A DNA stretch of 64,000 nucleotides from Octopus sinensis (taxonomy: Eukaryota): the NCBI RefSeq assembly GCF_006345805.1, contig NC_043010.1, forward strand, positions 25,916,001 to 25,980,000, read 5' to 3'. Position 1 is the stretch's first letter, and each line of letters opens with the position of its first letter. The position numbers were made by a program, and so were the translations under genes. Below are positions 14,030-60,736 of this stretch, piece by piece. The notes below the pieces were generated by a model that was not told where the DNA came from, did no database searches, and was given only the letters and a program-made list of their open reading frames with translations.

Positions 14030-14262
<233 letters not shown>

Positions 14263-14339
14263 ACATAGAAAGATAAATTGATAGATACAACTGAGTGGGC
14301 AAACGAAAAAATTTGAGACACTGCCTAGTGGGTTTTTTT

Positions 14340-14650
14340 TTAATTTTGATAAGCCTGGTACTTATTCTATCAGTTTCTTCTAGTGAAACCAGTAAGTTAT
14401 GAAGATGTAAATAAATGAACATCAGTTGTGAGGCAGTGATGAGGGAGAAACAGAAAGACACACACATAGACTTACATATATGTATATACAATTGATTTCT
14501 TTCAGTTTCTGTCTACAAAATCCACTGACAAGGCTTTGGTTGGTCTGAGGCTATAGCAGAAGATACATGCCAAGTTACCACATAGTGGGACTGAACTGAG
14601 GACCATGTGTTTTGGAACCAAGTTTGTTACCACACAGCCACACCTGCACC
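14340..14650 (-). mobile_element. Octopus-type SINE, diverged
   Basis: Reverse complement of the 7388 family (gggactgaac...accacacagccac). Confidence 0.75.
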
Positions 14651-14767
14651 TATGTATGTGTGTGGGTGGGTGGGTGTGTGGATGTGTGTGTATGGGTGTA
14701 TATATGTTTGCATGTATATATGTGTATTATATGCGTACATATTACATGCACATCTATATATATATAT

Positions 14768-17068: not shown

Positions 17069-19817
17069 CAGCAGTAAAGGACTCGGAAATCCACCTACAG
17101 GGCTACGCCCTCTTCAGATGTGACAGAGAAAAAAGGCGAGGTGGAGGTGTTGCTGTGTATGTTAAATCTGATCTCAAACTGTCCAGCGGTATTCTACCCA
17201 CTAATGCACAACCTACAACAAAATTCGATGCCGTCTACTGCAGGCTGAGCCTATCCGGGTTTTGCCTGCCCGTGTTAGCTGTCTACAGGCCGCCTCTTGC
17301 CGACCCCCAGGATGATGCTCATTTACTCGAAGCGATAAGACTCGTTTCAGTTTCTCATGACTGTTTGATATTAGGAGACTTCAACGCTCCCACGATCGAC
17401 TGGCCCACATCAATTTGTACATCATCTTCCCAGTTCGGCCAGACCCTTCTTGACATGGCTGAAGATTGTTTTCTATCGCAACATGTCGAATATCCGACAA
17501 GGCATCGGTCTGGGCAGCAGCCATCTATGCTGGATCTGGTATTCTCCCGCTATCCAAGATCAGTGTCAGGCTTATCTGTGTGCGCCCCTCTTGCCAAGAG
17601 TGATCATGTGGTCCTGAAGTTCGTCATGTACACAACAATTTCTACGCCCACGACTACTTCGCTGCCACGTAGAGTCTTCTCTGCAATTAATCTTGAAATT
17701 CTAACCGAGGCTTCTGCACTTCTGGACTGGCAATCCCTGATGATGATGTCGTCAGTTGGCAAACTATAGTCGTCCCTCAAAGCATATGTAATCTGGTTGA
17801 CTGACCAAGTAGTTCCCATTGGGTTCCCAAGAAGAAGAAACACAAGCCCTGGGTGACGAAGAAGGTTAAACGAGAACTTCGACTAAAAGATATTGCTTGG
17901 GCTGAATTCAAAAATCTAGATTCGACTGCAGCTTTTGAGGTGTACAAAACTCAACGAGACCGAACCGTGAAAGTTGAAAAAGAAGAACACCTCAGATATG
18001 AATACAGAATCGCAGCAAATGCCAGTCGCAATCCAAAAACCTTCTTTGCCCATGTCCAACGGAATTCCCGCTTGAACAACCAAATTGCAACGTTGGTAGA
18101 CTCAACAGGTGTATCGATTGAGGACCCTTATCAACAGAGTCATTTATTTGCCGAGGCTTTTTCAACTATTTTCAAACAAGATGATGGTTGTGAACCTCCT
18201 CCATTTGATAGATCGGTACCTCCAATACTTAGATTGGTCATCACGTGGGACGAAGTCGAAGGCGTTATTCAAGGCCTCGATGTCAACAAGGGTCACGGCC
18301 CTGATGGCATACACCCATGGGTTATCAAAGCGTTGGCTCCGGTCATCTGCGAGCCTTTAACACGTCTATTCAATATGTTATTGGCGACGGGTGTTATACC
18401 TGCGGACTAGAGAACAGCGATAATCTGCCCAATTTTCAAGAAAGGGAGCCGCGAAGACCCGCTTAACTACCGACCGGTTTCACTTACTTCGATAATCAGC
18501 AAGATGTTCAAAACCATCCTTAAGAAAAGTATGATGCTCCACCTCCAAAACACAGCCTCTATCTCCGATTCCCAACACAGCTTCGTGCCGAAGAGATTAT
18601 GCTTGACCAACTTACTGGTAATGGAAGAATCGGTGATGCGCATCCTCGATGATGGTGATGCTGTTGACATCATTTTATTGGACTTTGCTAAAGCTTTTGA
18701 CTCGGTAAACCAACGCCTATTACTTGTCAAGCTTCAAGCATATAGTTTCCATCCGGATATTGTACGATGGGTTGGTGCCTTCCTCTCAGATCGCTCCTTC
18801 CAAGTCCAAGTTAATGGTTCGCTGTCCGACGTCTCCAGTGCGAGCAGTGGCGTTCCTCAAGGTTCAGTGCTTGGGCCCTTATTGTTCTTAGTCTTCATAA
18901 ATGACTTGCCCAACAACCTCACGCAACACACTCTTCTATTTGCCGATGATGTCAAACTGGTTGCTCCTCGCAGTGATATAGAGGATCTCCGTCGATGCCT
19001 CCACCGAATTTGGAGATGGTCTAACGAATGGGACCTGTGTCTGAACGTGTCAAAGTGCTGTCATCTGCCTGTTGGCTATCCTCCTGCAACTCAACTTGAT
19101 TTCAAGCCGGGTCGTCTACAGCTGGAGAGGACTAACTAGGTAAAGGACCTTGGTATCTTGGTGGATTCTTCCTTTTCGCCTTCGGCCCAGTGCGTCCATG
19201 CTGCCAACAAAGCACGCGGAGTTCTGTTCTTGATTCGACAGTCATTCAGAATGCTCACAGCAGCTATATTCCTACCACTCTATGTCATGCTGGTGAGACC
19301 CATATTGGAGCACGGGATTCAAGCCTCTTCTCCTTATCTCCTCAAAGACATACAGCACCTCGAAAGAGTCCAGAGATTGGCTACCTGCATGGTTCTTGGT
19401 CTCAAGCATTTGTCATATGAAGAAAGGCTGAAGACGCTCGACCTTTATTCTCTAGAAAAACAACGACGCCGTGGTGATCTCATTCTTGCTCACAACATCA
19501 TAAGCAGAGTTTAACCTCTCGAAAGAGCTGTTCTTCACTCCTGCCCCAGAGCATCGGCTGCGGGGTCACTCCGAAAAGCTCTATCTGCGACGATTTCATC
19601 TCAATCGAAGGAGAGGTGCTTTCTCCGTCTGGGTTGCGGATCCGTGGAATAGGCTGCCAGACGAGATAGTGAAGATGCCGATGACCGCTCGGTTCAAAGT
19701 CACCCTTGACCACAAGTGGCCTGAACTCTATACATGAACACCACCCTGTACATAACTCCATGTCCCCCTACATGGCCTTGCTTTTTGCTTTTTGAGCCAA
19801 AAAATTAACTAACTAAC
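17069..19817 (+). mobile_element. CR1-clade LINE ORF2 (APE + RT), 5'-truncated, disabled
   Basis: DR..RGGGVAVYV, LGDFNAP, LDLVF, SDH; NYRPVSLTS, DFAKAFDSV, GVPQGSVLGPLLF, FADD; TAG at 17767, 18408 and 19137; (TAAC)n tail. Confidence 0.93.
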
Positions 19818-20690
19818 AAACATCTCTCTTGCACACCACAACTGATGCTTCTTAGGTCCAACTTTTCTCTGAAAGTACTTACACACTGTCAAGTATGAAC
19901 ACTGACATTACACATCTATCGGAGCATACTGGGTGTGGCACTTTTTCACACAACTATTTTCAGCCATTCTCGTCACATGACCATACCAGCGCAAACGTCT
20001 CTCTTGCACACCACAACTGATGCTTCTTAGGTCCAACTTTTCTCTCAAGGTACTTACACACTGTCGAGTATGAACACTGACATTACACATCCATCGGAGC
20101 ATCATGGCTTCATTTCTTGTGAGCTTACGCATATCTTCAGCAGTCACAGCCCATGTTTCACTACCATGTAGCATGGCTGTTCGTACACATGCATCATACA
20201 GTCTGTCTTTTACTCTGAGCGAGAGGCCTTTTGTCACCAGCAGGGGTAAGAGCTCTCTGAACTTTGCCCAAGCTATTCTTACTCTAGCAGTTACACTTTC
20301 AGCACACCAGCCCCCGCTGCTGACTTGGTCACCTAGGTAACGAAACTATCAACTATTTCTAGTTTTTCTCCCTGGAAAGTGACGGAAGTTGGTTTCTGAG
20401 CATTTTCAGTGTTTATTGCTCCTGAGCATCTGCCACATACAAAAACCATCTTCCTAGTTAGCCTTCCTTTGACATTGCTGCACCTCTTATGTGTCCATAG
20501 CTTACACTTGGTGCATCTTATAGAGTTTCTACCTACACCTTTTCTACAGATCGAGCAGGGCCATCTACCTGAAGGCGTTTGTGATTTGTCTACCTTCCTA
20601 CTGATTACGACTTTGGTTTTAGCCAGATTGACTCTAAGGCCCTTCGATTCTAATCCTTATTTCCACACCTGAAACTTCTCCTCCAGTTCT
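19818..20690 (-). repeat. Inverted near-identical duplicate of RTE segment 15838-16587, plus a ~110-bp extra copy
   Basis: The minus ORF 20237 matches plus ORF 16281 residue for residue up to CHT; it shares the same stop and frameshift. Confidence 0.92.
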
Positions 20691-21910
20691 ATATATTTAC
20701 TATATTAGGTTTATCTTTGTGCTCTTCTTAATTTGTATTCCATTTTATTTATCTATTACATGGATATATATATATTTATATTTATTTATTTAATTATTTA
20801 TTTTTGTTTATTTGGTGCTTATCAACTTATAATTTAATTTATAATTAATGAACTTATATCTAAATTAATAGTAACTTCTGTTTACTTTATGTGTATGTAT
20901 ATATACGTCTTTGGATGGGCAGACATATATTTAATTTATGATTTAGTGGATGTGGGTTGAGGTGTCGAGGTGTGTGAAAATGTGTATGTGTATGTATGTA
21001 TGTTTTTGTAAGTATAGGTATGTTCGTGGGTGGATGTACGGATGTATGTTTTTCCTTATACATATGAGTACGCAGGTGCGTATTTGGATATGTATATATG
21101 TATATGCGAATATTTATTCATGGGTGAATATAAGTATAGGTTTTATTTGTGCGTATGTGTGCGCAGATATATATTTAAATATGTATATATGTGTGTGCGA
21201 ATGTTCCCTGACACAGTATATGAGAGTGTATTAATATTTATGGGTATATGCGGATGTGCGTGTGAGTGTGTGTGTTAGTGTATAGACACTGCTGCCTGTA
21301 CTGATTTGTTTATAAGCCATGCAATGACAGACATGCACTCTGCAATTTAGTGAATGTGTAGGGATGTGTCGGGGTGTATTCATGTGTGTGTGCATGTGTG
21401 TGTGAGTTTTTGTGTGGACATGTGGGTTTAGGGTTGGATGTGGATGTTTTTCTTGTGCGGTGTGGTGGAGGTCGGGCAGCTCTCAGCGGACCAACCGTGA
21501 AGAAGACAATGATAATTTAAATTCAAACCCAATAGTGTATTTATGTCATAAGGAAAATTACTAACTGGAACCCGGACATACATATGTGCCATTTTGGATC
21601 CTAATGTAAGCGTTATTAATAATATTATGAATGATAATAATGGTAGCACTAATGGTATTGACAACGATAATGATGCTAACTTCAATGACACTTTGGAAAT
21701 TAGTAGAAAGTAATATAATGTACTATTGACTATGTATATTTGCATCTAGATACTAATATGTGTATGTTTATTAACACAATATTAAGTTGAAAACTGAAAC
21801 ATTGAATGTGGAACGTATATATGTTTACTAATTTATATTATTTATTTACATCATTATGTATATTTTTATATGTATAGGAGTGTGAGTATATGCACTCATA
21901 TGTATATGTA

Positions 21911-22024
21911 TATCTCCGAAGAGGGCTTATGATATCTTTGTAAATGTCTCATTTATATCTATATAAGGCTAATATTGGTAAAATGAGACATACTTATCTA
22001 CATGGCCGAAACAGCTGTAAGATG
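21911..22024 (+). ncRNA. Hammerhead motif in upstream pLTR (U4C variant, expanded loop II)
   Basis: tatct-CCGAAGA-gggc...ggcc-GAAAC-agct-GT-A-agatg; palindromic ACAGCTGT stem III; internal hairpin atgtctcattt/aaatgagacat. Confidence 0.65.
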
Positions 22025-22098
22025 TAATCTATACTTATATTTATATTTACTTATATTTATATTCTCTTTTTTATATACATTCTACTAATTATACAACA

Positions 22099-22610
22099 CT
22101 AGCAGTATCGCCCGGCGTTGCTCGGGTTTGTAAGGGAAATAACTATATAAGCATTTTTAGAGAGTTATTTCCCTTATAGATGCCAATTCGGGCTTTCTTA
22201 GCCATTTCTGTTTTGGTGTCTTCAAGTCATGAAGTTGTTGTTCTAAAAGAACGCTGGTCTCCTTGACAACGCTTTACGACGTTGATTTCCTTACACTCCC
22301 TTCCCCACAACTTCACGAGGGAGGGAAGAAGGGGAGAAGCAAACAGGTGCAGGTGTGACCATGGACGCCAACTCCGCCGCCATCGACACACGAAAAATTA
22401 TGCATTAAAATGGAATAAAAAATGATGTTAAATTATTTTTAAAATCGTAGACTCATCGTAGACGCGCGCTAATACTCAGACGGGCTCAATACGAATCATG
22501 ACTATAAGATACCCGAATTTGGTTAAACTGCACCGCAAAATGTGGGAGTAGTTAGGAATCTAAATCGAAGGGGACAGACACTCACACAACTACAGTTTTA
22601 TATATATAGA
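22099..22610 (-). mobile_element. Non-autonomous Helitron-like element (512 bp)
   Basis: 5' TC at 22610, 3' hairpin plus CTAG at 22099, A|T target; homologous to 3467-6224. Confidence 0.85.
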
Positions 22611-25600
22611 TTACTCTTTTATAACACCTTTTATGTACACTGATTTGTTCTGTTTTTTTATGTTTAACCCTACAGTCTCTTATGTGGTGGTTTAATAAAG
22701 TATGTGATTGAGTATTATCTGGTAATTGATATTTGATTTAGATGTATTTCTCCATTTTCTTATCTTGTATTAGGAATTTGTGGTAAATCATTTTACCTTT
22801 GCCCATATAATACAGTAAATGAATTGATTGCATCTTTGTTGGGTACTTCACTAGCAGTATATTGGATATATGTTATCCCATGCAGTGTTGCATTTACAAC
22901 CCCTATCTCAATTTGTAACTAAAGTTAACTTTCTGAGGAATATGAATTGCTAATGCTTGTATACTTGAAGCATCCACTCATTACTCTAAGTACTGACATG
23001 TATGTGAATACACCCAAGTATAGTACATTTATTCCTGAAAGATCATTACTGCTGGTAATATAGAGAAGATACTAATCAATTCATCAATGAAGGATGTACC
23101 CATCCCTACTAAGGACCACTACACCAAAGAGCTAATTTATAGAATTAATGAGTTCATTCACAGGATAAGATGGAAGATTTTCCACCACGAAAACAGTGAT
23201 AGCAAAATAAACCAAGAATGTAGGAACGAGGCCACCCGCAATGGTACAGGAAATACCTATGAGGAAATAATCAAACTAACTGGCAACACATTAAAATCTA
23301 GGAAATCTCCACCACCAAATAAACACCTGAAAAACTTTGAACAGGAATTATGGGACACCATCAAGAATATAAAATTTAAAAACCACCCATTGAGGTATAA
23401 CCCGCACCAAAGGAGGTTAAAGGAACTAATAAGAACTCTTAAGGGTAAGGATGGTATTTTAACCCATTCTGATAAAACCAGTAACATTTATAATATTGAC
23501 ATCCTCACATACCATGAACTATTGCATAAAAAAATTACAAAGAAGTATAAAACTGTACCTTTCAATACACTTAGGGAACTAAACTTAGAGGTAAGAGATA
23601 TAATGTTTGATTATTATCTGGAAGATAAAACCGAACCTTATACCCCCATGAGACCGAGAATTACACTTAAGGACCATAAGGAAAACTTCCTTGGTAACAC
23701 TCAGGTCAGACTGATTTGCCCTACTAAGTCAGACTTAGGTAAATTGAGTAAACTTATTCTAGACAAATACTTACCAACTATACGTAACAAGATTAAACTC
23801 AGCCTATGGAAAAACACCCAGGGTGCATTAGATTGGTTCTCTACCATTCAGATTAGTGATAATAGTAGCAATAAATTTATCCAATTTGATATACAAAATT
23901 ACTACTCCTTCATTAACACTATTATACTAAATAAGGCTTTAATTTTTGCTAGAAAACATACCAACATAAGTAATGGGGGAGATAAAGGTTATCTTAACAG
24001 CTAGAAAAACATTAATAGAGTTTGATAACAAACTATGGGCTAGAAAAGACACACCCAATTTATTTGACATCACCATGGGCTCGCCGGATTCAGCGGAAGT
24101 GACGGATCTAGTGAGGATGTATCTACTCGATAACCTTAATAGAGAATTACCTGAATTAAAAGGCGGACTATATAGGGACGACGCTTTATTTCTAGTCAGA
24201 AACACATCTAATAGGAGGCTAGAATTACTGAAAAAACGACTACATAAATTTTTAAAAAGTTTTGGCTTATCCATAGTTATTGAAAATGAAAATTACTCAG
24301 CCAATTATTTAGATGTCAATTGCAACCTTACTAATGGAATGCATGAGCCGTATATTAAACCTAATTCTAACTTAGTATATATAAACCACTCTAGCAATCA
24401 CCCCCCTCAAATTAAAAAGTCACTGGTAGGAAGCATTAGTCAGAGAATCTCTTATCTATCCTCAAACGAGGACGTATTCAATAGGCATTGTGAAAAATAC
24501 AACACGGCATTGCTGAAGGCAGGCTACAAAAATAAAATTTGGTATATACCCAATAATAATCCTTCGAACACAGGTGGAACTGTTACGAATAACACGAATA
24601 AATTCCGAAGGGACAATAATAATTGTAGGACAAAGAAAAATATACTATATAAAAAAACATGATAATAATACTAGTTTTAATAATCTTAGACTTGTCAACT
24701 TTGGTCTAAATAACTTAGTGCACAATAATGATAATAGGGATATCAACAATAGGCATAGTAACATTGATAATATATATGGCAATAGTGGAGTTCATCTAAA
24801 CAATAATAATAGGAAGAATAAGAATAACAATAAAGTCACTAGTAAAACTAATCTAAAGGGGAATTCTAGGCAATATATTGACAATACTAAGGGTAGTAAA
24901 CATATGGGTTGGAAGAATAATAGGGTTTTTCCCAAAAATAACAATTTGAGGAGTAATCCACATAGTGATGACGATACACTATGGCTAATAATACCATATG
25001 CAATGCAGATTAAAACGGATATAGTCAGAACAATACATAAAGTAATATATAGACTATTTACTAAGGGTAAGACTAAATTTAGCCAAATAATTAACAATAG
25101 AACTATTAGAATAGGATATAGTATCACGAATAATCTAGCCACCATCATCTCCTCCTTCAACAACAAGAAATAGGATTGCTTCTATAATGATAGAAAGATA
25201 AACATGGGTAGTAATGAAAATAAGTGCAATAATATCAACAGGAATAGGGCTACGGGGATTTCTGCCAGGGTTAAATCTCCTCAATCTGTTAATAGCTGCA
25301 ATTGCAGAAGCAAGAATCAATGTGTGTTTGGTAATAAATGCCTGAGGAGAGAGGTGGTCTACCAATGCACTGTAAATACACAATACAATAGCAGGGTGTA
25401 CATTGGTGCGACTAAAAATAGTATAGAACAACGGCTAAACTATCATAGATATACTTTTAAAAATAAAAATAGGATGAACTCTACGGGGTTAAGTACGTAT
25501 ATCTGGGAACTCAAGAGTAAAAACATAGATTAGATTGGGAAATACTAACATCTGCACCTGTATACAATAGTAGAAATAAAAAATGCTCTTTATGTATCAA

Positions 25601-26363
25601 TGAAATTTTCTTCATCATCAAAGCCAGCCAACCCATTATTATCAGCATTAATGAACGAAATTTATTTGCCTTCACAAATTGGCGTACACTTTCTCTAGAT
25701 TTAAATAACATCTAATTCTTTTACCAGTAATCCTTTAGCATTCCTCTATATAGGACTGTACTATTGGTCCTTACAATTTATAATTTATAACTTTGTGTCT
25801 CCATGTATGTGTTCTATATTGATTATTTCTGTCCCGACTGAAAAATATACAAAAATATATAGTCATTCTGATATATGCATGATATTCGGAACCCCACAGA
25901 GTCTTTTATCGGTGTAGGGTGTATAAGTGCATCATATCTTAGGGTACTAGTGTGAGAGTCTATAATTAGTATAAGTTGTTTATCTTGATGAGCATATGAG
26001 GTTTTTTTTGCGGTTGGTTTGTTGGGAGTTGTTGGATTTCTACTGCACAGGCGTGGGCTCGGCTGGCGCTGAACCGGAGTTTGTGCGTCCACACATGTGC
26101 ATCAACGTGTGCACTCCCGTGCGCTGTGCTTGCGGACATTCGCGTGTACTTGTACGCGTGTTCTGGTGTGCATCTCTGTGATCATGTGTGCGGGAGGGAC
26201 GTGTGCGTGTCTGCCCGGCCATGAATTCGCGTGTCCATGCGGGGGCATGCATGCACATGTATGTGCATTTCGGCATATATTTACTATATTAGGTTTATCT
26301 TTGTGCTCTTCTTAATTTGTATTCCATTTTATTTATCTATTTATCTATACATGGATATATATA

Positions 26364-26399
<36 letters not shown>

Positions 26400-26402
<3 letters not shown>

Positions 26403-28010
26403 GTGTATGAAGAAATGGAGCTGAACGAAGATTTAACAAAATTCCTTTTTATTATTTTCTACATATGTTTCAAAGGCTGCAAAGTCCCTAATTCAGATTG
26501 AATAAGGAGACCATTTTGCAGCCTTCTCTTCAGGAAAATCCAGGAACTTAATTCTCCAAACAAAATGCACATCAAGCTTTTCGACACACGCTCGCGAGGA
26601 GCCCATGGGATAAATGGCACAAAACTGTCTCTCAATATGGGTGAAAGCCGACGAAAAAATCCGTTGAGATAAGTCAGGTCAAAATCCGGCCAATAGGGGG
26701 GAGGGTTATAGGAGAATCAAAGAGTGAGAATGCATTCTGTATGACTGGTGTTAATATTCGAATTGCTTTAAGAATGACTGCTATGGTGTTTGGGTGTGAG
26801 AAATTGCCTACATGTATGTGTGTGTGTGCCTATGTATGTGTGGCAGTGTGTTTAGAAGGCTGCGAGGGAGAGAGAAATATATAGCAGCTATTAATGGTCA
26901 AGCAGCTGAAAAAAAAAACTGTGTCTGTGTGTTCGTCTGTAGCCAGTTGGTAGAGGGATGGAATGTCAACAAAGGGAAGATACAGTAACATCCCTGAAAG
27001 CGGTTCTAGATAAGTAGCAGTTCTTACGCTAATGGGGGAGTGATTTCTCCTTACAAATTTAATTCAAAATTATTTTCTTTTCTTAGGAAATCAATGGGTT
27101 AACTATCTTAGACCTCATTGGAATGCAAGAAATGTGTGCCGCCTCCAGTGCGGGCATCTAAAAGTATTTTGCACAATCAAGTTAATAAGTTGCCCTCGGG
27201 CGAACAGAATATGAAATAGTTCTGAGTTGCAAAGATTACAGATTATTTTGCCTCTATCAAACGGTGAGGACACCGATAAAATCGACCATTCCAGTCTAAA
27301 GGTTGAATTCGCGTTCTTCAAACGCCAGACTAATTTACTTAGTCCAGTAGCGTGTTGCTTTCCAAAATCGCTAAACATTGAGAAATGGTTCGATATTCTA
27401 ACTGCCAATTTCGATGATGAAGCTCCGATATACATGTAGACATCTGAATCAGTATAAACTGTGCACTGGTAAATGGCGTTTCTAATCTTGGAATTACTAG
27501 ATAAGAACCTTATTCTATTGGGGTTGGCTTCCGATATTAATACGGCGTTCTTATTACTATGATGATTGTAAAAACTACGGCTGTCTTCGACATTATTAAC
27601 CCCATTATCATTACTATTTAATGCAATATCGCCTGTATCCTCCCTGCCACTGAGAACGCTGTGATTGCTAATGTCCGTGATACTACTGTTGTTAAAACTG
27701 CTGCTAACATTGTTGTTGGGACTCCCTACATTAATGACTCGATCAGTGCTCTTATCCCTATTACCATTACTTACGTTAAAAACGCTACCATTGCTCTTAT
27801 CCTTATTACTATTACTAACTCCAAGGCTGGCATGGAGGTTGCTAATATCTGTGCCAGTTCTATTATTATTATTATTATTATTAATACTGCGTGTTATGCT
27901 GGCATTAGACGGAGCTGAGTCTCCGTTCGTAGGTGAGAGGGTCTTATTTAGCATCTTATTGTTATGGGAGGAAATTATGTGAAAGATTTTTAGTATTGGA
28001 GAAGGCATTT
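26400..28010 (-). mobile_element. 5'-truncated Penelope-like element (Asn-rich linker + GIY-YIG, ends 27115) with pLTR
   Basis: IISSHNNKML, N-rich linker, AIYQCTV...YMYIGASS...RISNH, CNLC; hammerhead in the 3' pLTR. The first residues of the track ORF are microsatellite. Confidence 0.88.
26454..26539 (-). ncRNA. Canonical type I hammerhead ribozyme
   Basis: attttc-CTGAAGA-gaaggctgcaaa...tttgcagccttt-GAAAC-atat-GT-A-gaaaat: stem I 6 bp, stem II 12 bp, all core nucleotides present, GUA triplet (cleavage 3' of the A at 26460). Confidence 0.88.
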
Positions 28011-28099
28011 TGCCGTTTATATATATATATATATGTATACATATAGATGTATATATATATAGATGTATATATATATATATGTATATATATTCAATTGAA

Positions 28100-28131
<32 letters not shown>

Positions 28132-28240
28132 CATATATATATATATACATATATATATATACATCATCATCGTTTAGCGTCCGTTTTCCATGCTAGCATG
28201 GGTTGGACGGAGCATGGGTTGGACATATATATATATATAT

Positions 28241-28278
<38 letters not shown>

Positions 28279-28346
28279 ATATATACATATATATATATAC
28301 ACATATATATATATACACATATATATATACATATATATATATACAC

Positions 28347-28384
<38 letters not shown>

Positions 28385-28436
28385 ATATATATACATATAT
28401 ATATATATTATACATATATATACATATATATAATAC

Positions 28437-28471
<35 letters not shown>

Positions 28472-28727
28472 CATATATATACATATATATATACATATAT
28501 ATACATATACATATATATATATACATATATATATACATATATATATATACATATATATATATACATATATATATACATATATATATACATAATATATTAT
28601 ACATATATATATATACACATATATATATACATATATATACATATATATATATAATACACATATATATATACATATATATACATATATATATATATACATA
28701 TATATATATACATATATATATATATAC

Positions 28728-28778
<51 letters not shown>

Positions 28779-28791
28779 CATATATATATAC

Positions 28792-28822
<31 letters not shown>

Positions 28823-28869
28823 CATATATATATACATATATATATACATATACATATATATATACATAT
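28011..28869. repeat. (TA)/(TACA)-type microsatellite expanse with an RTE-type tail fragment at ~28165-28225
   Basis: Direct inspection; catcatcatcgtttagcgtccgttttccatgctagcatgggttggacgg. Confidence 0.95.
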
Positions 28870-29855
28870 ACTCTTTTACTCTTTTACTTGTTTCAGCCAT
28901 CCGGCTGAGGCCATGCTGGGGCACCGCCCTTGTTGCTACCCTCTCTAAGTCCAGTTTGCCGTGGCTGGCCACTGATCTAAGAGAGAGTTTGTAGCTGCTG
29001 CCCTTAGGTTACCTTCGTACCTTGCAGTGGGTTCATCTGGGATCCCGGAAAGCAGCTTGTCTAGATGTTTTTTGAAAATGTCCACATCCGCATCATGTAG
29101 ATCTCTTAGTTTTCTTGGCAGTTTGTTGAACAGCTGAGGGCCCCTGAACCCCAGGCTATTACAGTATCTGCTCCTTACCCTGGATGTGGAAGACGGGACC
29201 TTTGGCACCACACAGTGACGTCCTGTACGGGGATTGGAACAGCTCTCAATTCAAAATTTGGTGCTAGTCCCTCCAGGATTTTCCATATGTATATCACTGC
29301 ATATCTCTCTCGTCTTCGTTCCAAGGAGTACAAATTGAGTTCCCTAAGCCTCTCCCAATAGTTCTTTTCTTTCATGGTGGAAATCCTCTTGGTGAAATGT
29401 CTTTGGATTGTCTCAAGCTCTGTGGTTAGTTTGACACTATGCGGTGACCACAGTTGGGAGCAGTAGTCCAGGCGGCTTAGGACAAATGTCCTCCATAGTG
29501 TCAACATGGTCTCGCAGTCTCTTGTCCGGAATGTCCTCAGGATCCAGCCAGTGAGTCGTCTGCACATTGTCGCCACCTTCGCGATGTGTGAAGAAAAAGA
29601 TGCATCGTCACTCATGTCTATCCCCAGGTCCCGTATTGATTTCGATACTGGGATTTCGATCCCTCCTGGACCAGTATAGTTGTGTTGTAATGTATATGTG
29701 TTTACAGCTTGATATTGTAAGGCTTGAAATTTACCAGCATTAAATTGCATGTTGTTGTCTTCAGCCCATTTGTATATGGCATCCAGATCTTGTTGTAAAA
29801 GGTCAGCATCAGCTGGGTTTTTGATTGCCTGTGCTACCTTTGTGTCATCAGCATA
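28870..29855 (-). mobile_element. CR1-type LINE 3' fragment (RT C-terminus and 3' end)
   Basis: YADDTKV...[14 protein letters not shown]...[11 protein letters not shown]...[10 protein letters not shown]...GPQLFNKLP; 3' end gcggtgccccagcatggcc...gaaacaagtaaaagagtaaaagag. Confidence 0.9.
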
Positions 29856-30014
29856 TATACATATATATATATACATATATATATATACATATATATATAC
29901 ATATATATATATACATACATATATATATATACATACATATATATATATACATATATATATACATACATATATATATATACATACATATATATATATACAT
30001 ACATATACATATAC

Positions 30015-30045
<31 letters not shown>

Positions 30046-30115
30046 CATATACATACATATATATATATACATATATATATATACATACATACATATATAT
30101 ACATACATATAATAC

Positions 30116-30483
<368 letters not shown>

Positions 30484-30612
30484 CATATATATATATAATA
30501 TATATATATTACATATATATACATATATATACATATATATATATATACATAATATATATTATATACATATATATATATATATACATATATTATATACATA
30601 TATATATATACA

Positions 30613-31474
30613 TATCATCATCATCATCATCATCATCATCGTTTAACGTCCGCTTTCCATGCTAGCATGGGTTGGACGGTTCAACTGGGGTCTGGCAAGC
30701 CCGAAGGCTGCACCAGGCCAGTCAGATCTGGCAGTGTTTCTACAGCTGGATGCCCTTCCTAACGCCAACCACTCCGAGAGTGTAGTGGGTGATTTTATGT
30801 GCCACCGACACAGGTGCCAGACGAGGCTGGCAGACGGCCACGCTCGGATGGTGTTTTTTTTTTTATGTGCCACCGACACAGGTGCCAGACGAGGCTGGCT
30901 GACGGCCACGCTCGGATGGTGTTTTCTTATGTGTCACCGACACAGGTGCCAGACAAGGCTGGCGGACGGCCACGCTCGGATGGTGTTTGTTATGTGCCCT
31001 CAGCACGGAGGCCAGTCGTTGCGGTACTGGCTACGATCACGTTCGGATGGTTTTCTTATGTGCCACCGGCACTGGTACCACAAGGATACAAATTCCATTG
31101 ATGTTCATCTATTTTGATTTGGTTCGATTTGATTTGATTTGATTCGATTCGATTCTCACTTGCCTCAACAGGTCTTCACAAGTGTCACAAGAAGGAAGGT
31201 ATGCACAGGTGGACTGACTACGTCCCAGGTAGGGGCCACGGATTATGGCTTCACTAGTCTTGCCGGGTCTCTCACGCACAGCATACTTCCATAGGTCTCG
31301 GTCTCTAGTCATTTCCATGGTGAGACCTAACGTCCGAAGGTCGTGCTTCACCACTTCGTCCCAGGTTTTCCTGGGTCTACCTCTTCCACGGGTTCCCTCA
31401 ACTGCTAGGGATTGGCACTTTCTCACACCCTATCTTCATCCATTCTCGCCACATGACCATATACATATATATAT

Positions 31475-31510
<36 letters not shown>

Positions 31511-31529
31511 CATATATTATATATATATA

Positions 31530-31560
<31 letters not shown>

Positions 31561-31752
31561 CATACATATATTATATATAATATATATACCACATATATTA
31601 TATATACATACATATATATATATATATATATACATACATATATATTATATATATATATATACATACATATATACATACATATATAATATATATTATATAC
31701 ATACATATATATATATATATATACATACATATATATATACATACATATATAT

Positions 31753-31822
<70 letters not shown>

Positions 31823-33760
31823 CGTAAAAGCACCATCCGTTCGCTATAACCCTCTCCGTAACCTTCATTACCTGATCCAGCAGCTTGATGCCCCTGTAGT
31901 TATTTGTATCTAGGGCGTCGCCTTTACCTTTGTAGCAGTTGACTATTATGCTGCTACACCAGTCATTGGGTATGACTCCTTCGTGTATCACCTGGTTAAC
32001 TATACAGGTGACTAAGCTATAGCCGACACTACCAGATATTTTGAGCATCTCTGCAGTAATTCCTGATGGGCCTGGGGCTTTCCCTGTTTTCATGCTTCTA
32101 ATTGCCTTATCTACTAAGGAACTGTTAACTCTCGGATTGCTGGTCCCTCTGTTGGGTCGACATTCGGGAGACTCTCTTTATCCCATTCATTTTCCTCATT
32201 CAGCAACCTTTCATAGTGGCGTCTCCAAGCCTCTCTCTTTGCATCCTCATTTAGCGCAAGTGAACCGTCATCCTTGCGAACACTTTTCTCTCCTACCACG
32301 TCACGATTCTCTCTCACACACTGTCTTGCAACACGAAATACCTCAAGTCTTTCATCCTCACGGCGCAGGACATTGGCAAATTTTTCTTTATCTGCCTCCC
32401 CTCTGGCTAGATAGACCTGTCTCCTAGCTTCCCTTCTGGCAGTCTGATACACTTCCCTGCTACCACCGTTCTTCCAGGCCTTCCAAGCCTGTTTCTATTG
32501 TCTAATAGCCCTGTCGACAATATTGTTCCACCACCACGTTATTTTGGGTCTTAAGGGGACTTTGCACCAGCCACAGATCTGGTCAGCGGCTTTCAGCAGG
32601 TTGTCCCTCAGAAGCGTCCAGTTGTCTTCTACCCCATGCGTAGCTATACCCCCTTCCATTTCGTCAAAGGCTTCAAGTAACATATCTCTAAATCTCTGTC
32701 CATTCGCAGGGTCTTTAAGCTTCCAGACCCTTCTTCTCCATGTTGGTTGTCTTCTAGTCGCCCTCTTAGTCCTGATCCTAAAGTCACTAACTACCAGTCT
32801 ATGTTGTGGGGTGCATTCTTCGCCTGGTAAGGTTTTGGCATTTATAAGCAGCCATCTTTCCCTTTTTCTGGCAAGGATGTAGTCGATTTGGCTAGTAAGC
32901 CGGCCCGATCGGTAGGTGACCAGGTGGCTTGTTGGTTTCCTGAAGTTAGTGTTGCAAACCATAAGACTATTCGCATCGCAGAACTCCAGCAGCCTGGTTC
33001 CCTCCTCGTTGCGGGAACCATAACCGTAGCCTCCATGTACGCCATGGAAGCCCCCAGCATGACGTCCAACATGCCCATTGAAATCACCAGCCACAAAGAG
33101 AAGGTCCCTGTCGTTCGTCAATGAGGTGGTCTGCAGTAGGGTGTCATAGAAACTGTCTTTCTGTCCATCGGGTAGCCCTGGCTGAGGGGCATAGGCCGAT
33201 ATAATGGTTGCTAATCTATTATGAAGCACTATTCTAATCTTAAGTATTCTGTCACTTACTCTGATTACCTCAATTACTCTATCTACCCATTTCTCAGCGA
33301 TAAGTATACCCACGCCACCGACCCCGTCAGTGTTCCCTGCCCAGAAAATCTTGTACCTGTGTTCCTTGCCTGTGAGGAACCTAGCAGATCCTCCTCTCCA
33401 CCATATTTCTTGCATGCAACATACATCAACCCATCTCCGTTCAAGCATCTCAACTATCTCACCAGATCTACCTTTCAGTGTGCCAACATTGAGGGTGCCC
33501 ACCCTGAGGGAGTGGAAGGTATGGGCCCGAGAGGCCCAGGGACGGGGAGCAGTGGCGTCATGTACCTGAAAAGAAGAAAGCTCGCATTTGGCAGAATTCA
33601 TAAGCAAAGCAATGATCTTAAGTTCAACCTGTTACACTACACTATCATGTTTTGCGCCGTATTTTCACCACCTTATATAGAAGGGGTGGTATTGGCTTAA
33701 GGCCTTTAGGTGTTCATGGAAGAAAAGCAAAGGAAGACAAGCTGAGATAAGGACTTCCGG
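30613..33760 (-). mobile_element. RTE-clade LINE (APE + N-terminal RT; RT core missing; 3' end with GAT tail)
   Basis: VGTLNVGTL, GGVGILI, AGDFNGHVG, SQIDYIL, QHRLVV; RT breaks at ~31845, (TA) block 31460-31822, RT C-terminus 31110-31460, 3' hairpin units 30797-31075. Confidence 0.92.
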
Positions 33761-33789
33761 TACAGGTGGAGGGGGCGGGAGGGCGGGCG

Positions 33790-35074
33790 CACTGCTCACT
33801 GGGAAGGATGAGATTTGGCGGCAGAAAGACAAGATTTGAGACGAAATGTTTTGCGGTCAAGCCTCGTGCATTGGGTTTTATAGGGGAGGGGGTGCGGAGG
33901 TATGAGTAGGAGGCAGAAGCCTATGGAACCAAGTGAAATATATACAGAGAGAGAGACATAGTGATAACAGAGGGAGACAACGACACCACAGAGAGAGAGA
34001 GATATACATAGTGATAACAGAGGGAGAAAACGCCACCGCTCACTGGAAAGGATGAGATTTGGCGGCAGAAAGACAAGATTTGAGACGAAATGTTTTGCGA
34101 TCGTGTGAATAAGTTTCTATGAGTGAAAGTTGGGAAGGATGGGGTAGAGATTAAGCGACAGAAAGACCAGATTTGAGACGAAGTGTTTTGCAGTCGTGTG
34201 AATAAGTTTCTGTAAGTGAAAGTTTATATGTTGTGGAGAAATGCTTCAGCTAGCATTTGAGACGAAAAACAACGATAAGGCTTGATGGTGATAATAATAC
34301 TTGCAAAAAACAATGAAAGGAGCAAACAGGTCGGAAACTTAAATATATATCTTAGCTGATATTTTTCATCCTGAGGTTCGTGTTTCGTGTGTTACAGCCA
34401 GGAGAAAAGGAATAGTAAGGGGCGGCCAAGCCTCGTGCATTTGGTTTTTATAGGGGAGGGGGTGTGGAGGTGTTAGTAGGAGGCAGAAGCCTATGGAACC
34501 AAGTGAAATATATACAGAGAGAGAGACATAGTGATAACAGAGGGAGACAACGACACCACAGAGAGAGAGAGATATACATAGTGATAACAGAGGGAGAAAA
34601 CGCCACCGCTCACTGGGAAGGATGAGATTTGGCGGCAGAAAGACAAGATTTGAGACGAAATGTTTTGCGATCGTGTGAATAAGTTTCTATGAGTGAAAGT
34701 TGGGAAGGATGGGGTAGAGATTAAGCGACAGAAAGACCAGATTTGAGACGAAGTGTTTTGCAGTCGTGTGAATAAGTTTCTGTAAGTGAAAGTTTATATG
34801 TTGTGGAGAAATGCTTCAGCTAGCATTTGAGACGAAAGACAACGATAAGGCTTGATGGTGATAATAATACTTGCAAAAAACAATGAAAGGAGCAAACAGG
34901 TCGGAAACTTAAATATATATCTTAGCTGATATTTTTCATCCTGAGGTTCGTGTTTCGTGTGTTACAGCCAGGAGAAAAGGAATAGTAAGGGGCGGTCAAG
35001 CCTCGTGCATTGGGTTTTATAGGGGAGGGGGTGCGGAGGTGTGAGTAGGAGGCAGAAGCCTATGGAACCAAGTG

Positions 35075-35080
<6 letters not shown>
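33790..35080. repeat. Tandem ~570-bp monomers (about 2.3 copies) adjoining the RTE 5' end
   Basis: caagcctcgtgcatt recurs at 33858, 34427 and 34997; near-identical copies. Confidence 0.95.
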
Positions 35081-35121
<41 letters not shown>

Positions 35122-35671
35122 CATGTACGTTTAAATTTAAAATAATAAAGGTGAAAAATTGAATATTAATTTGATTAATATGAATTGAAAACCAGTGGTG
35201 TAGCATATAAGACAATAGCAGATCTTCTAGCAAAATGGATGTCCACTCTTAATGGTTCATCCCTATTATATAATAGTTTGACTTTAATAGTTTCAGATTT
35301 AAAGTGAAAGCATATGACATTACAATAGAGAGATGTTTTTGTTTCACTATTAACACGTAATACTGAAATAGTGAAGATATGATATTGCTGTGGTCTCGCC
35401 CTAGGAAAGTTAAAAAATAGTGAAGATATGATATTGCTATGGGCTCGCTCTAGGCAAGAAGTTGAACATTTTTTTTGCCCATGACACTACATGGACCCTA
35501 AGTAAGGCATGTGTAAAATTTGAATGAAATTGGTTGTGTAGTTCTCAAGTTTTAGGGATTCACACACATTCTCAGTTTTATATATATAGATATACATATA
35601 TAAAAATTTTTTTCGTAATGAGAAAAAAAAACCAAGGCTGTGTAGATTTTAGAACATTTATAGATAGAAGG

Positions 35672-35718
35672 TCTTACAGCTGTTTCCAGCATATCTATTA
35701 TATCCCTTCATCAGATAA
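35672..35718 (-). ncRNA. Decayed hammerhead motif (isolated pLTR remnant)
   Basis: ttat-CTGATGA-aggg...gctg-GAAAC-agct-GT-A-agac; core intact, stems I and II mismatched. Confidence 0.45.
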
Positions 35719-35731
35719 TCTCATAACCTCC

Positions 35732-35778
<47 letters not shown>

Positions 35779-36210
35779 TACTTTAACACACATACACACA
35801 CACAGCCCAAAAATCAAATGAGTAAAAGCCAAATTTGAGGCAAAGAGTAAACAAACAAAAACAAAAAATACTCTGCAGGGTCAGACAAATGGATGCATGT
35901 GTTTGAAAAGTGTAGAAATATGAAGTAAAAAAAACTACAAAGAAGCTAAATATACCAAAGGAAGGAACAGAAGAGGAGCTGATGTTTTGAGTGATGCCCT
36001 TTTAAGAGAGAAACAGGAGAAAGAAAAACGCATGGATACAAAAGAAAAACCATCTGTTCACACAGACACACACAAATTAAACAAATACATAAATTATACA
36101 CAACTTAAATACTTACACACACATTCGAACAAATTAAACACATTCACAGCCATTAACAAAGCATAATGAGATGGAGACAACATCATAAGAAAGAAAAATG
36201 TCAGTCTTAC

Positions 36211-36418
36211 TTTGGACTTGATTTATTCGGTGTTAACGGGCTGGACAAGTGTTTGTTCTGTATCTCCATCAACTTTGACTTGCGCCGTTCTCGAAGCTCT
36301 TCTGCATCATCTTTGTTAGTCAGCAAGGCAGGAGTACCAAGACTGAGTCTTCTAGATGTAGTCCCCGGTGAGCCGACATGGGGGGTGGCAAATACGTTGG
36401 CCATGTTTTAAGCAGACA
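36211..36418 (-). CDS. NCAPH: Condensin complex subunit 2 (CAP-H/barren), first coding exon (ATG at 36404)
   Basis: Acceptor tttcattttttaaAG| at 36419, 14 nt UTR, then MANVFATPH...GTPALLTNKDDAEELRERRKSKLMEIQ...SPK. This resembles the vertebrate NCAPH N-terminus (GTPV...NDDEKERLQRRRS). Donor AA|GTAAGA at 36210, phase 2. Confidence 0.85.
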
Positions 36419-60735: not shown

Positions 60736-60736
60736 T

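What the first reader, a model, noticed from the sequence alone, without database searches (positions are those of the whole stretch)
26454..26539. Textbook hammerhead ribozyme in the sense strand of the 23.7-kb NCAPH intron
All core nucleotides are present with a 6-bp stem I, a 12-bp stem II extended by a further hairpin, and GUA. NCAPH is transcribed on this strand, so each nascent transcript contains it and could be cut at 26460 before the long intron is spliced. Intronic hammerheads are known in amniote genes. Caveat: pLTR hammerheads with a short palindromic stem III (ACAUAUGU) usually cleave well only as dimers, so a lone copy may be slow. Two more motifs (8161, 35672) are also sense to NCAPH.
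Basis: partly seen in the sequence, partly recalled or inferred. Interest (0 to 1): 0.78.

Follow-up and report, generated by a model that had tools for sequence, protein, structure and literature searches.

The report
Transposon-borne hammerhead ribozyme in octopus intron
The hammerhead ribozyme motif is real and lies sense to the condensin gene NCAPH, but it is the standard ribozyme carried at the 3' end of a broken Penelope-like retrotransposon that landed in the intron, so it is an ordinary transposon remnant rather than a host gene regulator.

Summary
The motif exists exactly where stated, on the minus strand (26539->26454). It has a full hammerhead core, a 6-bp helix I, a 12-bp helix II with an extra hairpin, and a GUA site that cuts after 26460. 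Chance does not explain it: 0.03 relaxed matches are expected per shuffled window and 0 of 300 shuffles gave a strict match.

The motif is not a host element. It lies 575 nt downstream of a truncated ORF (linker plus GIY-YIG-like endonuclease) of a Penelope-like retrotransposon (PLE) that resembles the Hydra clade. The fragment spans 28006->26393, is 5'-truncated, and ends in (TA)n. Octopus sinensis paralogs carry the same ribozyme. A subfamily only ~71% identical keeps the core and shows three compensatory pair changes.

Helix III is a 2-bp or palindromic stem with folding probability 0.04. There are no loop-loop contacts. Rfam scores it 20 bits against a threshold of 34. A lone copy is therefore probably almost inactive.

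The 8161 motif belongs to a second PLE fragment and has a U4->C core. The 35672 motif is only a core match. Verdict: a new member of a known kind, of low interest.

The parts
26454..26539 (-). Type I hammerhead ribozyme motif of the PLE type. It has a long helix II and a short palindromic helix III.
   Evidence: Sequence read. Only descriptor hit in the window, against 0.033 expected. Full-length sub-threshold match to Rfam RF00163. Conserved in paralogs L001, L004 and L003.
26527..26533 (-). Catalytic core box C3-A9 (CUGAAGA).
   Evidence: Invariant in all four copies except N7 (A or U).
26472..26526 (-). Helix II. It is 12 bp starting with G10.1.U11.1, followed by two short helices and a 5-bp apical hairpin.
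   Evidence: Fold. Pair counts: helix II cells 91.7% paired with one compensatory A-U>U-A, and one compensatory A-U>C-G in the apical hairpin.
26460..26471 (-). G12A13A14, the helix III palindrome ACAUAUGU, and the cleavage-site nucleotide A17 at 26460 (GUA^G).
   Evidence: Monomer helix III probability is 0.04. Cofolding two copies gives an 8-bp intermolecular helix III at -65.0 kcal/mol against -56.6 for two monomers.
26393..26453 (-). Conserved 3'-terminal block of the PLE downstream of the ribozyme. It ends in the element's own ...CACUAAAUAUAUA, which merges into (TA)n. It contains AAUAAA at 26453-26448.
   Evidence: Alignment with L001, L004 and L003. It is the only non-coding stretch alignable between the two subfamilies.
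27115..28006 (-). [quoted passage not shown] The stop codon is at 27115-27117.
   Evidence: Homologs are Octopus sinensis proteins P0001-P0003 and the full-length 718-aa P0004. Pfam GIY-YIG is weak (E=0.0075 for the octopus EN and 2.2e-4 for P0004).
26393..28006 (-). The whole 5'-truncated Penelope-like element insertion (about 1.6 kb).
   Evidence: 87.8% identity over 1646 columns to L001:5923-7553 from Octopus sinensis. L001 and L004 extend further 5'.
26355..26400 (.). (TA)n microsatellite abutting the 3' end of the insertion.
28007..28170 (.). TA-rich microsatellite abutting the 5' truncation point.
12557..36210 (-). NCAPH intron 1 (23,654 nt) containing the insertion. GT is at 36210-36209 and AG at 12558-12557.
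   Evidence: The reading frame joins across the splice (phase 2).
36211..36404 (-). NCAPH first coding exon (ATG at 36404-36402).
12466..12556 (-). NCAPH exon 2 (...LSVSQLTEHYTNCVKLNAEN).
10246..10332 (-). NCAPH exon 3 (KITTKNAFGLHLIDYM...).
8161..8223 (-). It has a 6-bp helix I, a CCGAAGA core (U4->C), an extra U before GAAA, and a GUU site.
   Evidence: No Rfam hit and no hit with the family model R1.
8418..9428 (-). ORF of a second, different 5'-truncated Hydra-clade-like PLE. It has FLDV..., IWFTPPYS, a CSCRNKELC linker, a GIY-YIG-like EN, CGLC and CPH.
9448..9500 (+). 53-nt inverted copy, 100% identical, of the 3' end of the second PLE (equal to minus strand 8181-8129), abutting (TA)n.
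   Evidence: It matches the 'inverted 5'-truncated copy' arrangement described for PLEs (PMC8557442).
35652..35714 (-). It is a chance match or an unrecognisable wreck.

Best explanation
The motif is the hammerhead ribozyme that Penelope-like retrotransposons (PLEs) carry in their terminal repeat region.

Shown here:
- A roughly 1.6-kb, 5'-truncated copy of an octopus PLE family inserted, in sense orientation, into a (TA)n tract in the first intron of the condensin gene NCAPH. The family resembles the Hydra clade: a C-terminal GIY-YIG-like endonuclease, short elements, and (TA)n insertion.
- The ribozyme lies 575 nt after the ORF stop and about 65 nt before the end of the copy.

Inferred from the literature on PLE hammerheads: in an intact, tandem or pLTR-flanked PLE, the ribozyme is thought to cut long or multimeric element transcripts at GUH. 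Two copies would pair through the palindromic helix III, possibly helped by the element's own protein, to give unit-length RNA with 5'-OH and 2',3'-cyclic phosphate ends.

Inferred for this locus: the motif is a single passenger copy. Its helix III is too short to fold alone, it lacks the loop-loop contacts that make natural hammerheads fast, and there is no partner copy in the intron. It is therefore expected to cleave the NCAPH pre-mRNA rarely if at all, and any slow cleavage inside an intron would probably not prevent splicing.
For: Motif reality and chance:
- The motif is real and beyond chance.

Link to a PLE:
- The upstream ORF 27115-28006 (minus strand) has Octopus sinensis homologs (P0001 71% identity; P0003).
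- It aligns with full-length proteins P0004 and P0005, which show RT-like motifs (FYPSI, YRDDG), FLDVTL...SNHPP (Pfam HTH_animal on record), IWFNPP, a CxCX5-7C linker and a GIY-YIG match at E=2.2e-4.
- The DNA of 28006->26393 is 87.8% identical to L001.

Conservation of the ribozyme:
- L001 and L004 carry the same ribozyme.
- L002/L003, only 70-73% identical, keep every core nucleotide and have a canonical GUC site and G10.1-C11.1.
- They show compensatory changes in helix I (U-A>C-G), helix II (A-U>U-A) and the apical hairpin (A-U>C-G). Cells are 92.7% paired against 33-48% when partners are slid, and 14 of 500 shuffles reach the observed value.
- Between the subfamilies, the ribozyme plus the 3' block is the only alignable non-coding DNA.

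PLE-style architecture:
- Copies end in (TA)n, as described for almost all Hydra-clade families, in which canonical HHRs are universally present (PMC8557442).
- A second PLE fragment in the window has the typical inverted truncated partner.
- TARA scaffold L005 has the ORF flanked by direct repeats.

Expected activity:
- The monomer fold rarely forms helices I and III, whereas the dimer MFE is the double-hammerhead.
- Metazoan PLE hammerheads showed no cleavage as single motifs and low cleavage as dimers (PMC4209133).
- The Anolis PLE ribozyme needed the element's protein, and no RNA-seq ends were seen at its site (PMC11167929).
Against: - No full-length copy of this octopus family with an RT was recovered, so PLE and Hydra-clade membership rests on the C-terminal half and on distant full-length relatives.
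- Pfam GIY-YIG hits are below the curated cut-off, and a PDB profile search found nothing.
- This family has lost the cysteines of the CxCX5C linker that helps define the Hydra clade.
- Covariation rests on only four sequences from two lineages.
- No cleavage or expression data are available, so 'nearly inactive here' is a prediction.
- I could not obtain the orthologous NCAPH intron from another species, so conservation of the insertion is untested.
Confidence: 0.88

Rival explanations
1. Host-exapted intronic ribozyme. The sense hammerhead cuts nascent NCAPH pre-mRNA in intron 1 and thereby tunes condensin expression or splicing.
For: The motif is intact in its core and sense to NCAPH inside a 23.7-kb intron. 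Trans-dimerisation with other PLE transcripts is thermodynamically possible. Conserved intronic hammerheads exist in amniotes (own knowledge; also mentioned in PMC4209133).
Against: - It is part of a truncated transposon whose paralogs carry the same motif elsewhere in the genome.
- The monomer rarely folds into the active shape.
- There are no tertiary-contact loops, and Rfam is sub-threshold.
- PLE hammerheads are weak in vitro.
- A slow hammerhead in an intron did not impair splicing in published systems.
- There is no evidence of orthologous conservation.
Confidence: 0.04
2. Chance occurrence of hammerhead core strings next to a hairpin.
For: Core-only patterns are common: 35 matches of a loose pattern against 12 +/- 8 expected. 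Rfam gathering thresholds are not reached.
Against: The full descriptor is expected 0.033 times per window, and 0 of 300 shuffles matched at the observed helix lengths. The same architecture is kept in a 71%-identical subfamily with compensatory changes.
Confidence: 0.01
3. Non-LTR retrozyme: a non-autonomous tandem repeat that makes circular RNA by double hammerhead cleavage.
For: It is a type I hammerhead with a palindromic helix III, as in metazoan retrozymes. A 2026 preprint derives retrozymes from PLE pLTRs.
Against: There is a single copy and no tandem unit. The flank is unique in the window, and the family model finds no second copy. The motif is contiguous with a PLE ORF in four independent loci.
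Confidence: 0.03
4. 3'-UTR element of the LINE-like retrotransposon whose APE and RT fragments lie upstream on the same strand (28.9-33.6 kb).
For: Exo_endo_phos and RVT_1 hits lie on the minus strand just upstream. The motif is followed by a microsatellite, as at many LINE 3' ends.
Against: Homology with the octopus paralogs starts at 28006 and does not include the LINE pieces. The ORF immediately upstream is GIY-YIG-like, not LINE. The LINE fragments are separated from it by microsatellite.
Confidence: 0.01

Closest known systems
Hammerhead motifs in the pLTRs of Penelope-like elements (Cervera and de la Pena 2014, PMC4209133)
   Same: Type I topology. Helix II is larger than usual, helix I is about 6 bp with no defined loop 1, and helix III is a short palindrome that implies dimeric action. 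It sits in the terminal region of a PLE, and most genomic copies are single motifs in truncated elements.
   Different: Helix II is even longer (12 bp plus a 31-nt branched extension, against 6-8 bp). [quoted passage not shown] This subfamily has G10.1.U11.1 instead of G-C. It keeps a 2-bp helix III, like the Drosophila, rotifer and shrimp variants, rather than the strictly 'minimal' form.
Hydra clade of C-terminal EN+ PLEs (Craig et al. 2021, PMC8557442)
   Same: A C-terminal GIY-YIG-like endonuclease with CxxC and CxH around the conserved E and N. Insertion into (TA)n. A hammerhead is present. Relatives are short elements under 3 kb (the full-length TARA scaffold L005 is 2.6 kb), and P0004 carries DKT and RWK motifs. 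Molluscs are listed among the hosts.
   Different: The octopus family at 26.5 kb has no cysteines in the CxCX5C linker and carries a ~150-aa N/S-rich insert. No RT-bearing copy of it was recovered. The second fragment at 8.4-9.4 kb does keep CxCX5C.
Poseidon PLE of Anolis carolinensis (PAc) hammerhead (PMC11167929)
   Same: A PLE-borne hammerhead whose cleavage is weak alone. The element shows a 'tail' signature, with extra 3' sequence in some copies only. Here L001 and L004 have 175 nt that the window copy and L003 lack.
   Different: In PAc the ribozyme overlaps the ORF start. Here it is seen 3' of the ORF, although in a tandem or pLTR arrangement the two positions are equivalent.
Dimeric type I hammerheads of newt satellite 2 and Schistosoma Sm-alpha (own knowledge; cited in PMC4209133)
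   Same: An unstable helix III with a palindromic loop, giving activity as a double hammerhead between adjacent copies.
   Different: Those have a 4-bp helix II and loop 1-loop 2 contacts, and they occur in tandem arrays or SINE-like units. This one has neither contacts nor a neighbouring copy.
Conserved intronic hammerheads of amniotes (HH9/HH10; own knowledge)
   Same: Sense orientation inside an intron of a protein-coding gene.
   Different: Those are canonical, fast ribozymes with tertiary contacts, conserved at orthologous sites. This is a transposon fragment in a mollusc with no evidence of orthologous conservation.

Membership tests
Hammerhead ribozyme, type I (Rfam RF00163) | Conserved core: C3 U4 G5 A6 N7 G8 A9, G12 A13 A14, A15.1-U16.1, H17. 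| tested here: met
   CUGAAGA ... GAAA ... U-A17 read directly. All are invariant in four copies except N7 and H17 (A or C).
Hammerhead ribozyme, type I (Rfam RF00163) | Three helices around the core, with helix I open (type I). | tested here: met
   Helix I is 6 bp and helix II 12 bp. Helix III is 2 bp with a 4-nt loop as a monomer, or 8 bp as a dimer.
Hammerhead ribozyme, type I (Rfam RF00163) | Score at or above the curated gathering threshold of the family model. | tested here: not met
   20.2 bits against 34 (E=0.0065 in a 104-nt search), with the full model length aligned. No hit in larger searches.
Hammerhead ribozyme, type I (Rfam RF00163) | G10.1-C11.1 closing pair of helix II. | tested here: not met
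   G.U in the window and L001, G.G in L004, and G-C in L003.
Hammerhead ribozyme, type I (Rfam RF00163) | Helices supported by covariation. | tested here: inconclusive
   Three pairs carry compensatory double changes, one in each of helices I, II and the apical hairpin. 14 of 500 shuffles reach this value. Only four sequences from two lineages were available.
Hammerhead ribozyme, type I (Rfam RF00163) | Loop 1-loop 2 tertiary contacts that give fast cleavage at physiological Mg2+. | tested here: not met
   Helix I is not closed by a loop and stops at 6 bp. Helix II is 12 bp, so its loop cannot reach helix I (by inspection).
Hammerhead ribozyme, type I (Rfam RF00163) | Site-specific self-cleavage giving 2',3'-cyclic phosphate and 5'-OH ends. 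| not testable with these tools
   Needs an in vitro transcription and cleavage assay or end-specific RNA sequencing.
Penelope-like element (PLE) | Telomerase-like reverse transcriptase in the single ORF. | tested here: inconclusive
   The RT is absent from the window copy because of the 5' truncation at 28006. L001 and L004 keep only the RT C-terminal region (FLDVTL...SNH). The full-length relatives P0004 and P0005 show FYPSI and YRDDG motifs by eye and HTH_animal on record. Pfam RVT_1 did not hit them.
Penelope-like element (PLE) | GIY-YIG endonuclease domain. | tested here: inconclusive
   Pfam PF01541 gives E=0.0075 (17 bits) for the octopus EN and E=2.2e-4 (21.9 bits, cut-off 22.6) for P0004. 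IY...YIG...R...H...E...N motifs align. A PDB profile search found nothing.
Penelope-like element (PLE) | Pseudo-LTRs from partial tandems, and/or an inverted 5'-truncated partner copy. | tested here: not met
   Not present at this insertion. It is present in relatives: direct repeats flank the ORF in L005, and there is a 53-nt inverted partner at the second window fragment.
Penelope-like element (PLE) | Hammerhead motif in the terminal repeat region. | tested here: met
   The motif lies at a fixed position between the ORF stop and the 3' end in the window, L001, L004 and L003.
Hydra clade of PLEs | Insertion into (TA)n. | tested here: met
   (TA)n lies at the 3' end of the window copy, L001, L003 and L004, with TA-rich sequence at the window 5' junction.
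Hydra clade of PLEs | CxCX5C linker before the EN, and CxxC and CxH around the conserved E and N. | tested here: inconclusive
   CxxC (CNLC) and CxH (CPH) are present. The CxCX5C cysteines are absent from this octopus family but present in the second fragment (CSCRNKELC) and P0005 (CSCRNKNQC).
Hydra clade of PLEs | DKT (instead of DKG) and RWK motifs in the N-terminal and RT region. | not testable with these tools
   That region is missing from every octopus copy recovered. P0004 has ADKTT and RVRWK.
Non-LTR retrozyme | Tandem array of short units, each with a hammerhead. | tested here: not met
   No second copy of the unit or its flank in the window.
Conserved host intronic hammerhead (HH9/HH10 type) | Orthologous conservation of the ribozyme in the same intron across species. 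| not testable with these tools
   No cephalopod NCAPH locus could be retrieved. The protein search returned no octopus ortholog, and exact look-ups failed.

The most novel reading that the evidence does not exclude
The lone sense-strand hammerhead is not inert. It could be activated in trans, either by pairing its palindromic helix III with abundant transcripts of the same PLE family or by the PLE-encoded protein, as shown for the Anolis element. It would then cut NCAPH pre-mRNA in intron 1, coupling condensin expression to transposon activity.
Probability: 0.03. Interest if true: 0.7.

Novelty: new member of a known kind. Interest (0 to 1): 0.2.

Why it matters
As it stands, the finding mainly shows that hammerhead motifs seen in invertebrate introns should first be checked for a Penelope-like element next door.

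It adds a cephalopod example to the known association between PLEs and hammerheads. This example has an unusually long branched helix II that the Rfam type I model misses at its threshold.

It also raises a minor point for PLE biology. An octopus family resembling the Hydra clade has lost the zinc-finger-like CxCX5C linker, yet its copies still end in (TA)n. This bears on the proposal that the linker directs microsatellite targeting, unless the family is mobilised in trans.

If the ribozyme did cut NCAPH transcripts, it would be a transposon-derived regulator of a core chromosome-condensation gene. Nothing found here points that way.

Tried and rejected
- Rfam at gathering score on the whole window, and at E<=10 on 401 nt, gave no hammerhead. 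Only the 104-nt search showed the sub-threshold RF00163 match.
- I first suspected the motif was the 3' UTR of the LINE-like element upstream. I rejected this when the paralog alignment stopped at 28006 and the adjacent ORF proved GIY-YIG-like.
- Self-BLAST of the flank within the window found only microsatellite matches.
- The family covariance model R1 found no further copy in the window or loci, and it did not match 8161 or 35672.
- A metagenome pattern scan for relatives of the ribozyme returned 48 loci. All were chance matches in bacterial coding DNA without helices.
- An NCAPH N-terminal protein search, meant to fetch orthologous loci, returned no octopus ortholog. The best hit was 49% identical.
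- Exact look-ups of two window ORFs found nothing, so presence or absence of the insertion in other species could not be tested.
- A PDB profile search with the endonuclease alignment gave no meaningful hit.
- A PDB search with the NCAPH exons gave none.
- Rfam on the TARA scaffold L005 and on the 8161 motif gave no hammerhead.
- No full-length RT-bearing copy of the octopus family was found. L001 and L004 share the same 5' end inside the RT C-terminal region.
Full report
OBSERVATION. Read on the minus strand, window 26539->26454 is AUUUUC CUGAAGA GAAGGCUGCAAA...UUUGCAGCCUUU GAAA CAUAUG UA GAAAAU. This has the layout of a type I hammerhead:
- Helix I is 6 bp (26539-26534 with 26459-26454).
- The C3-A9 box is CUGAAGA.
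- Helix II is 12 bp and continues into two short helices and a 5-bp apical hairpin (26526-26472).
- G12A13A14 follows, then A15.1 to U16.1 form the palindrome ACAUAUGU, and A17 is at 26460.

Two details depart from the canonical ribozyme. Pair 10.1-11.1 is G.U, and helix III can form only two pairs around a 4-nt loop within one molecule.

CHANCE. A descriptor scan that I wrote found this site and nothing else on either strand of the window. It required the core, helix I of at least 4 bp, helix II of at least 3 bp and helix III of at least 2 bp. In 300 dinucleotide-preserving shuffles the relaxed descriptor matched 0.033 times per window, a (5,5,2) version 0.003 times, and a (6,8,2) version never.

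Rfam gave no hit in the whole window at gathering thresholds and no hammerhead in a 401-nt search. In a 104-nt search, Hammerhead_1 (RF00163) aligned end to end with exactly these boundaries at 20.2 bits, E=0.0065, below the gathering score of 34. The model treats the 51-nt helix II as an insertion. The motif is therefore real but atypical for the curated family.

GENE CONTEXT. Three minus-strand exons encode the N-terminus of condensin subunit 2:
- 36404-36211, from the ATG to a GT donor at 36210.
- 12556-12466, after an AG ending at 12557.
- 10332-10246.

Joined, they hit Pfam Cnd2 (PF05786) at E=2.8e-14 over profile positions 14-121. All database relatives carry PF05786. The intron 36210-12557 is 23,654 nt, and the motif is sense to the gene.

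WHAT THE MOTIF BELONGS TO. Immediately upstream on the same strand, ORF 27115-28170 ends in a domain with IY...YIG...R...H, CxxC and CxH motifs. Its relatives are Octopus sinensis proteins (P0001 at 71% identity, P0002, P0003). More distant relatives are two full-length metagenomic proteins, P0004 (718 aa) and P0005. These have RT-like motifs, the FLDVTL...SNHPP region (Pfam HTH_animal on record), an IWFNPP block, a CxCX5-7C linker and a weak GIY-YIG match at E=2.2e-4. This is the architecture of a Penelope-like element with a C-terminal endonuclease.

At the DNA level, window 28006->26393 is 87.8% identical over 1646 columns to O. sinensis locus L001. L001 and L004 extend further 5' into the RT C-terminal region, so the window copy is 5'-truncated. 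It is bounded by TA-rich microsatellite on both sides.

The description of the Hydra clade in Craig et al. 2021 fits these relatives (PMC8557442):
- Elements are short, under 3 kb.
- They have a C-terminal GIY-YIG without CCHH.
- They have a CxCX5C linker, and CxxC and CxH around the conserved E and N.
- They carry DKT and RWK motifs.
- They insert into (TA)n.
- Canonical hammerheads are universally present.
- Molluscs are among the hosts.

One exception stands out. The octopus family at 26.5 kb has lost the linker cysteines and carries a ~150-aa N/S-rich insert.

CONSERVATION OF THE RIBOZYME. L001 and L004 carry the same 86-nt motif at the same place. L004 has two mismatches in helix II. L002/L003, a subfamily only 70-73% identical, keep every core nucleotide. 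They have CUGAUGA, a canonical GUC site, G10.1-C11.1 and the near-palindrome ACAUGUGU.

On the four-sequence alignment, 92.7% of cells pair, against 33-48% when partners are slid. Three pairs carry compensatory double changes: helix I U-A>C-G, helix II A-U>U-A, and apical hairpin A-U>C-G. Of 500 shuffles, 14 reach these values. Four sequences from two lineages is thin evidence, but the direction is clear. Between subfamilies, the ribozyme plus the ~65-nt 3' block is the only alignable non-coding DNA. This suggests selection at the level of the transposon.

L001 and L004 have 175 more nucleotides after the point where the window copy and L003 end. Whether this corresponds to the 'tail' present in only some copies of a PLE (PMC8557442, PMC11167929) or is unrelated sequence was not resolved.

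HOW IT MOST LIKELY WORKS. In the element's own life cycle, the literature proposes that the ribozyme trims long or tandem PLE transcripts, acting as a dimer through the palindromic helix III (PMC4209133). The folding results here agree:
- The hammerhead-competent monomer structure is 2.4 kcal/mol above the MFE.
- Helix III has probability 0.04.
- Helix I has probability at most 0.05 once 30-100 nt of flank are included.
- The MFE of two copies is exactly the double hammerhead, with an 8-bp intermolecular helix III (-65.0 against 2 x -28.3 kcal/mol).

Published tests found no cleavage by single metazoan PLE motifs and weak cleavage by dimers. The Anolis Poseidon ribozyme cleaved only with the element's protein, and it left no RNA-seq ends at its site.

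In this intron there is no partner. The family model finds no second copy, and the palindrome at 35672 (ACAGCUGU) would mispair in the middle. Published work also shows that an intron cut co-transcriptionally by a hammerhead is still spliced, whereas a faster HDV ribozyme blocks splicing (PMC2995048). I therefore infer that this copy is a nearly silent passenger.

THE OTHER TWO MOTIFS. The 8161 motif (8223->8161, minus strand) lies 195 nt downstream of ORF 8418-9428. That ORF is the C-terminal part of a different PLE resembling the Hydra clade, with an intact CSCRNKELC linker. Its 3' terminal 53 nt are repeated, inverted and 100% identical, at 9448-9500. Both ends abut (TA)n, which is the classic PLE inverted partner. 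The motif has a 6-bp helix I, but its core is CCGAAGA (U4->C) and there is an extra U before GAAA. Rfam does not see it.

The 35672 motif has CUGAUGA, GAAAC and a palindrome but no helix I or II. Such core-only matches are frequent.

COMPARISON AND NOVELTY. The closest known thing is the PLE hammerhead class of Cervera and de la Pena 2014, in the Hydra clade of Craig et al. 2021. The differences are a longer branched helix II, G.U at 10.1-11.1 in this subfamily, and loss of the zinc-finger-like linker in the associated ORF. A full-text search found no paper describing hammerheads of octopus PLEs specifically. This is a new member of a known kind, not a new kind.

LIMITS. No RT-bearing copy of the octopus family was recovered. 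The GIY-YIG assignment rests on sub-threshold Pfam hits plus motifs. The orthologous intron in other cephalopods could not be fetched. No activity or expression data exist. The source species is inferred to be an octopus only from the nearest relatives of the transposon.

Noticed in passing
window 8065-9500: A second 5'-truncated PLE resembling the Hydra clade lies on the minus strand. Its ORF is 8418-9428, with an intact CxCX5C linker. A 100%-identical 53-nt inverted copy of its 3' end sits at 9448-9500. Both ends lie in (TA)n, in the NCAPH intron after exon 3. Its hammerhead-like motif (8223-8161) has CCGAAGA instead of CUGANGA.
   Followed up: partly
L005 1-255 and 2470-2643 (TARA scaffold encoding P0004): The full-length PLE ORF is flanked by direct repeats. 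Each holds GGGU|GUGA(U/C)CA|...|GAAAC(G/A)CAG(C/U)GUC|ACCC. By eye this is a hammerhead whose C3-G8 pair is swapped to G3-C8. N7 varies, and helix III shows a compensatory G-C>A-U change between the two repeats. Rfam did not detect it.
   Followed up: partly
window 27115-28006 (minus strand); L001 5680-6813; L003 5848-6789: This octopus PLE family has replaced the cysteine-containing CxCX5C linker with a ~150-aa asparagine/serine-rich stretch, yet all four copies seen still end in (TA)n. This bears on the idea that the linker directs microsatellite targeting. Mobilisation in trans is an alternative.
   Followed up: partly
window 26448-26453 (minus strand): A canonical AAUAAA hexamer lies directly 3' of the ribozyme cleavage site, sense to NCAPH. 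It is conserved in L001 and L004 but is AGUAAA in L003.
   Followed up: no
L001 7554-7729 and L004 7318-7472: The paralogs carry about 175 nt beyond the point where the window copy and L003 end. In L004 part of it forms an inverted repeat around a (TA)n tract. It could be a PLE 'tail' or a separate small element.
   Followed up: partly
window 28000-31850: Several kilobases of TA/TACA-rich microsatellite expansion are interleaved with fragments of LINE-like elements on the minus strand (Exo_endo_phos at 32495-33607 and RVT_1 pieces at 29175-30155). It creates long spurious 'YIYIYI' ORFs.
   Followed up: no
window 58500-60800: A G/T-rich tandem array (GC skew 0.7) gives long Cys/Val/Tyr/Met pseudo-ORFs on the plus strand. 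It is satellite-like.
   Followed up: no
window 43978-47944 (minus strand) and 62295-63083 (plus strand): A Gypsy-type LTR retrotransposon pol (protease, RT, RNase H, integrase) and a gag-like ORF elsewhere. LINE-like RT and APE ORFs also lie at 14605-19139 on the plus strand. The window is mostly transposon-derived.
   Followed up: no
L003 3556-3984 (minus strand): Another PLE-type ORF fragment (VLWFN...FNRLTVKVSY) lies on the opposite strand of the same O. sinensis locus. This shows that several such families populate the genome.
   Followed up: no
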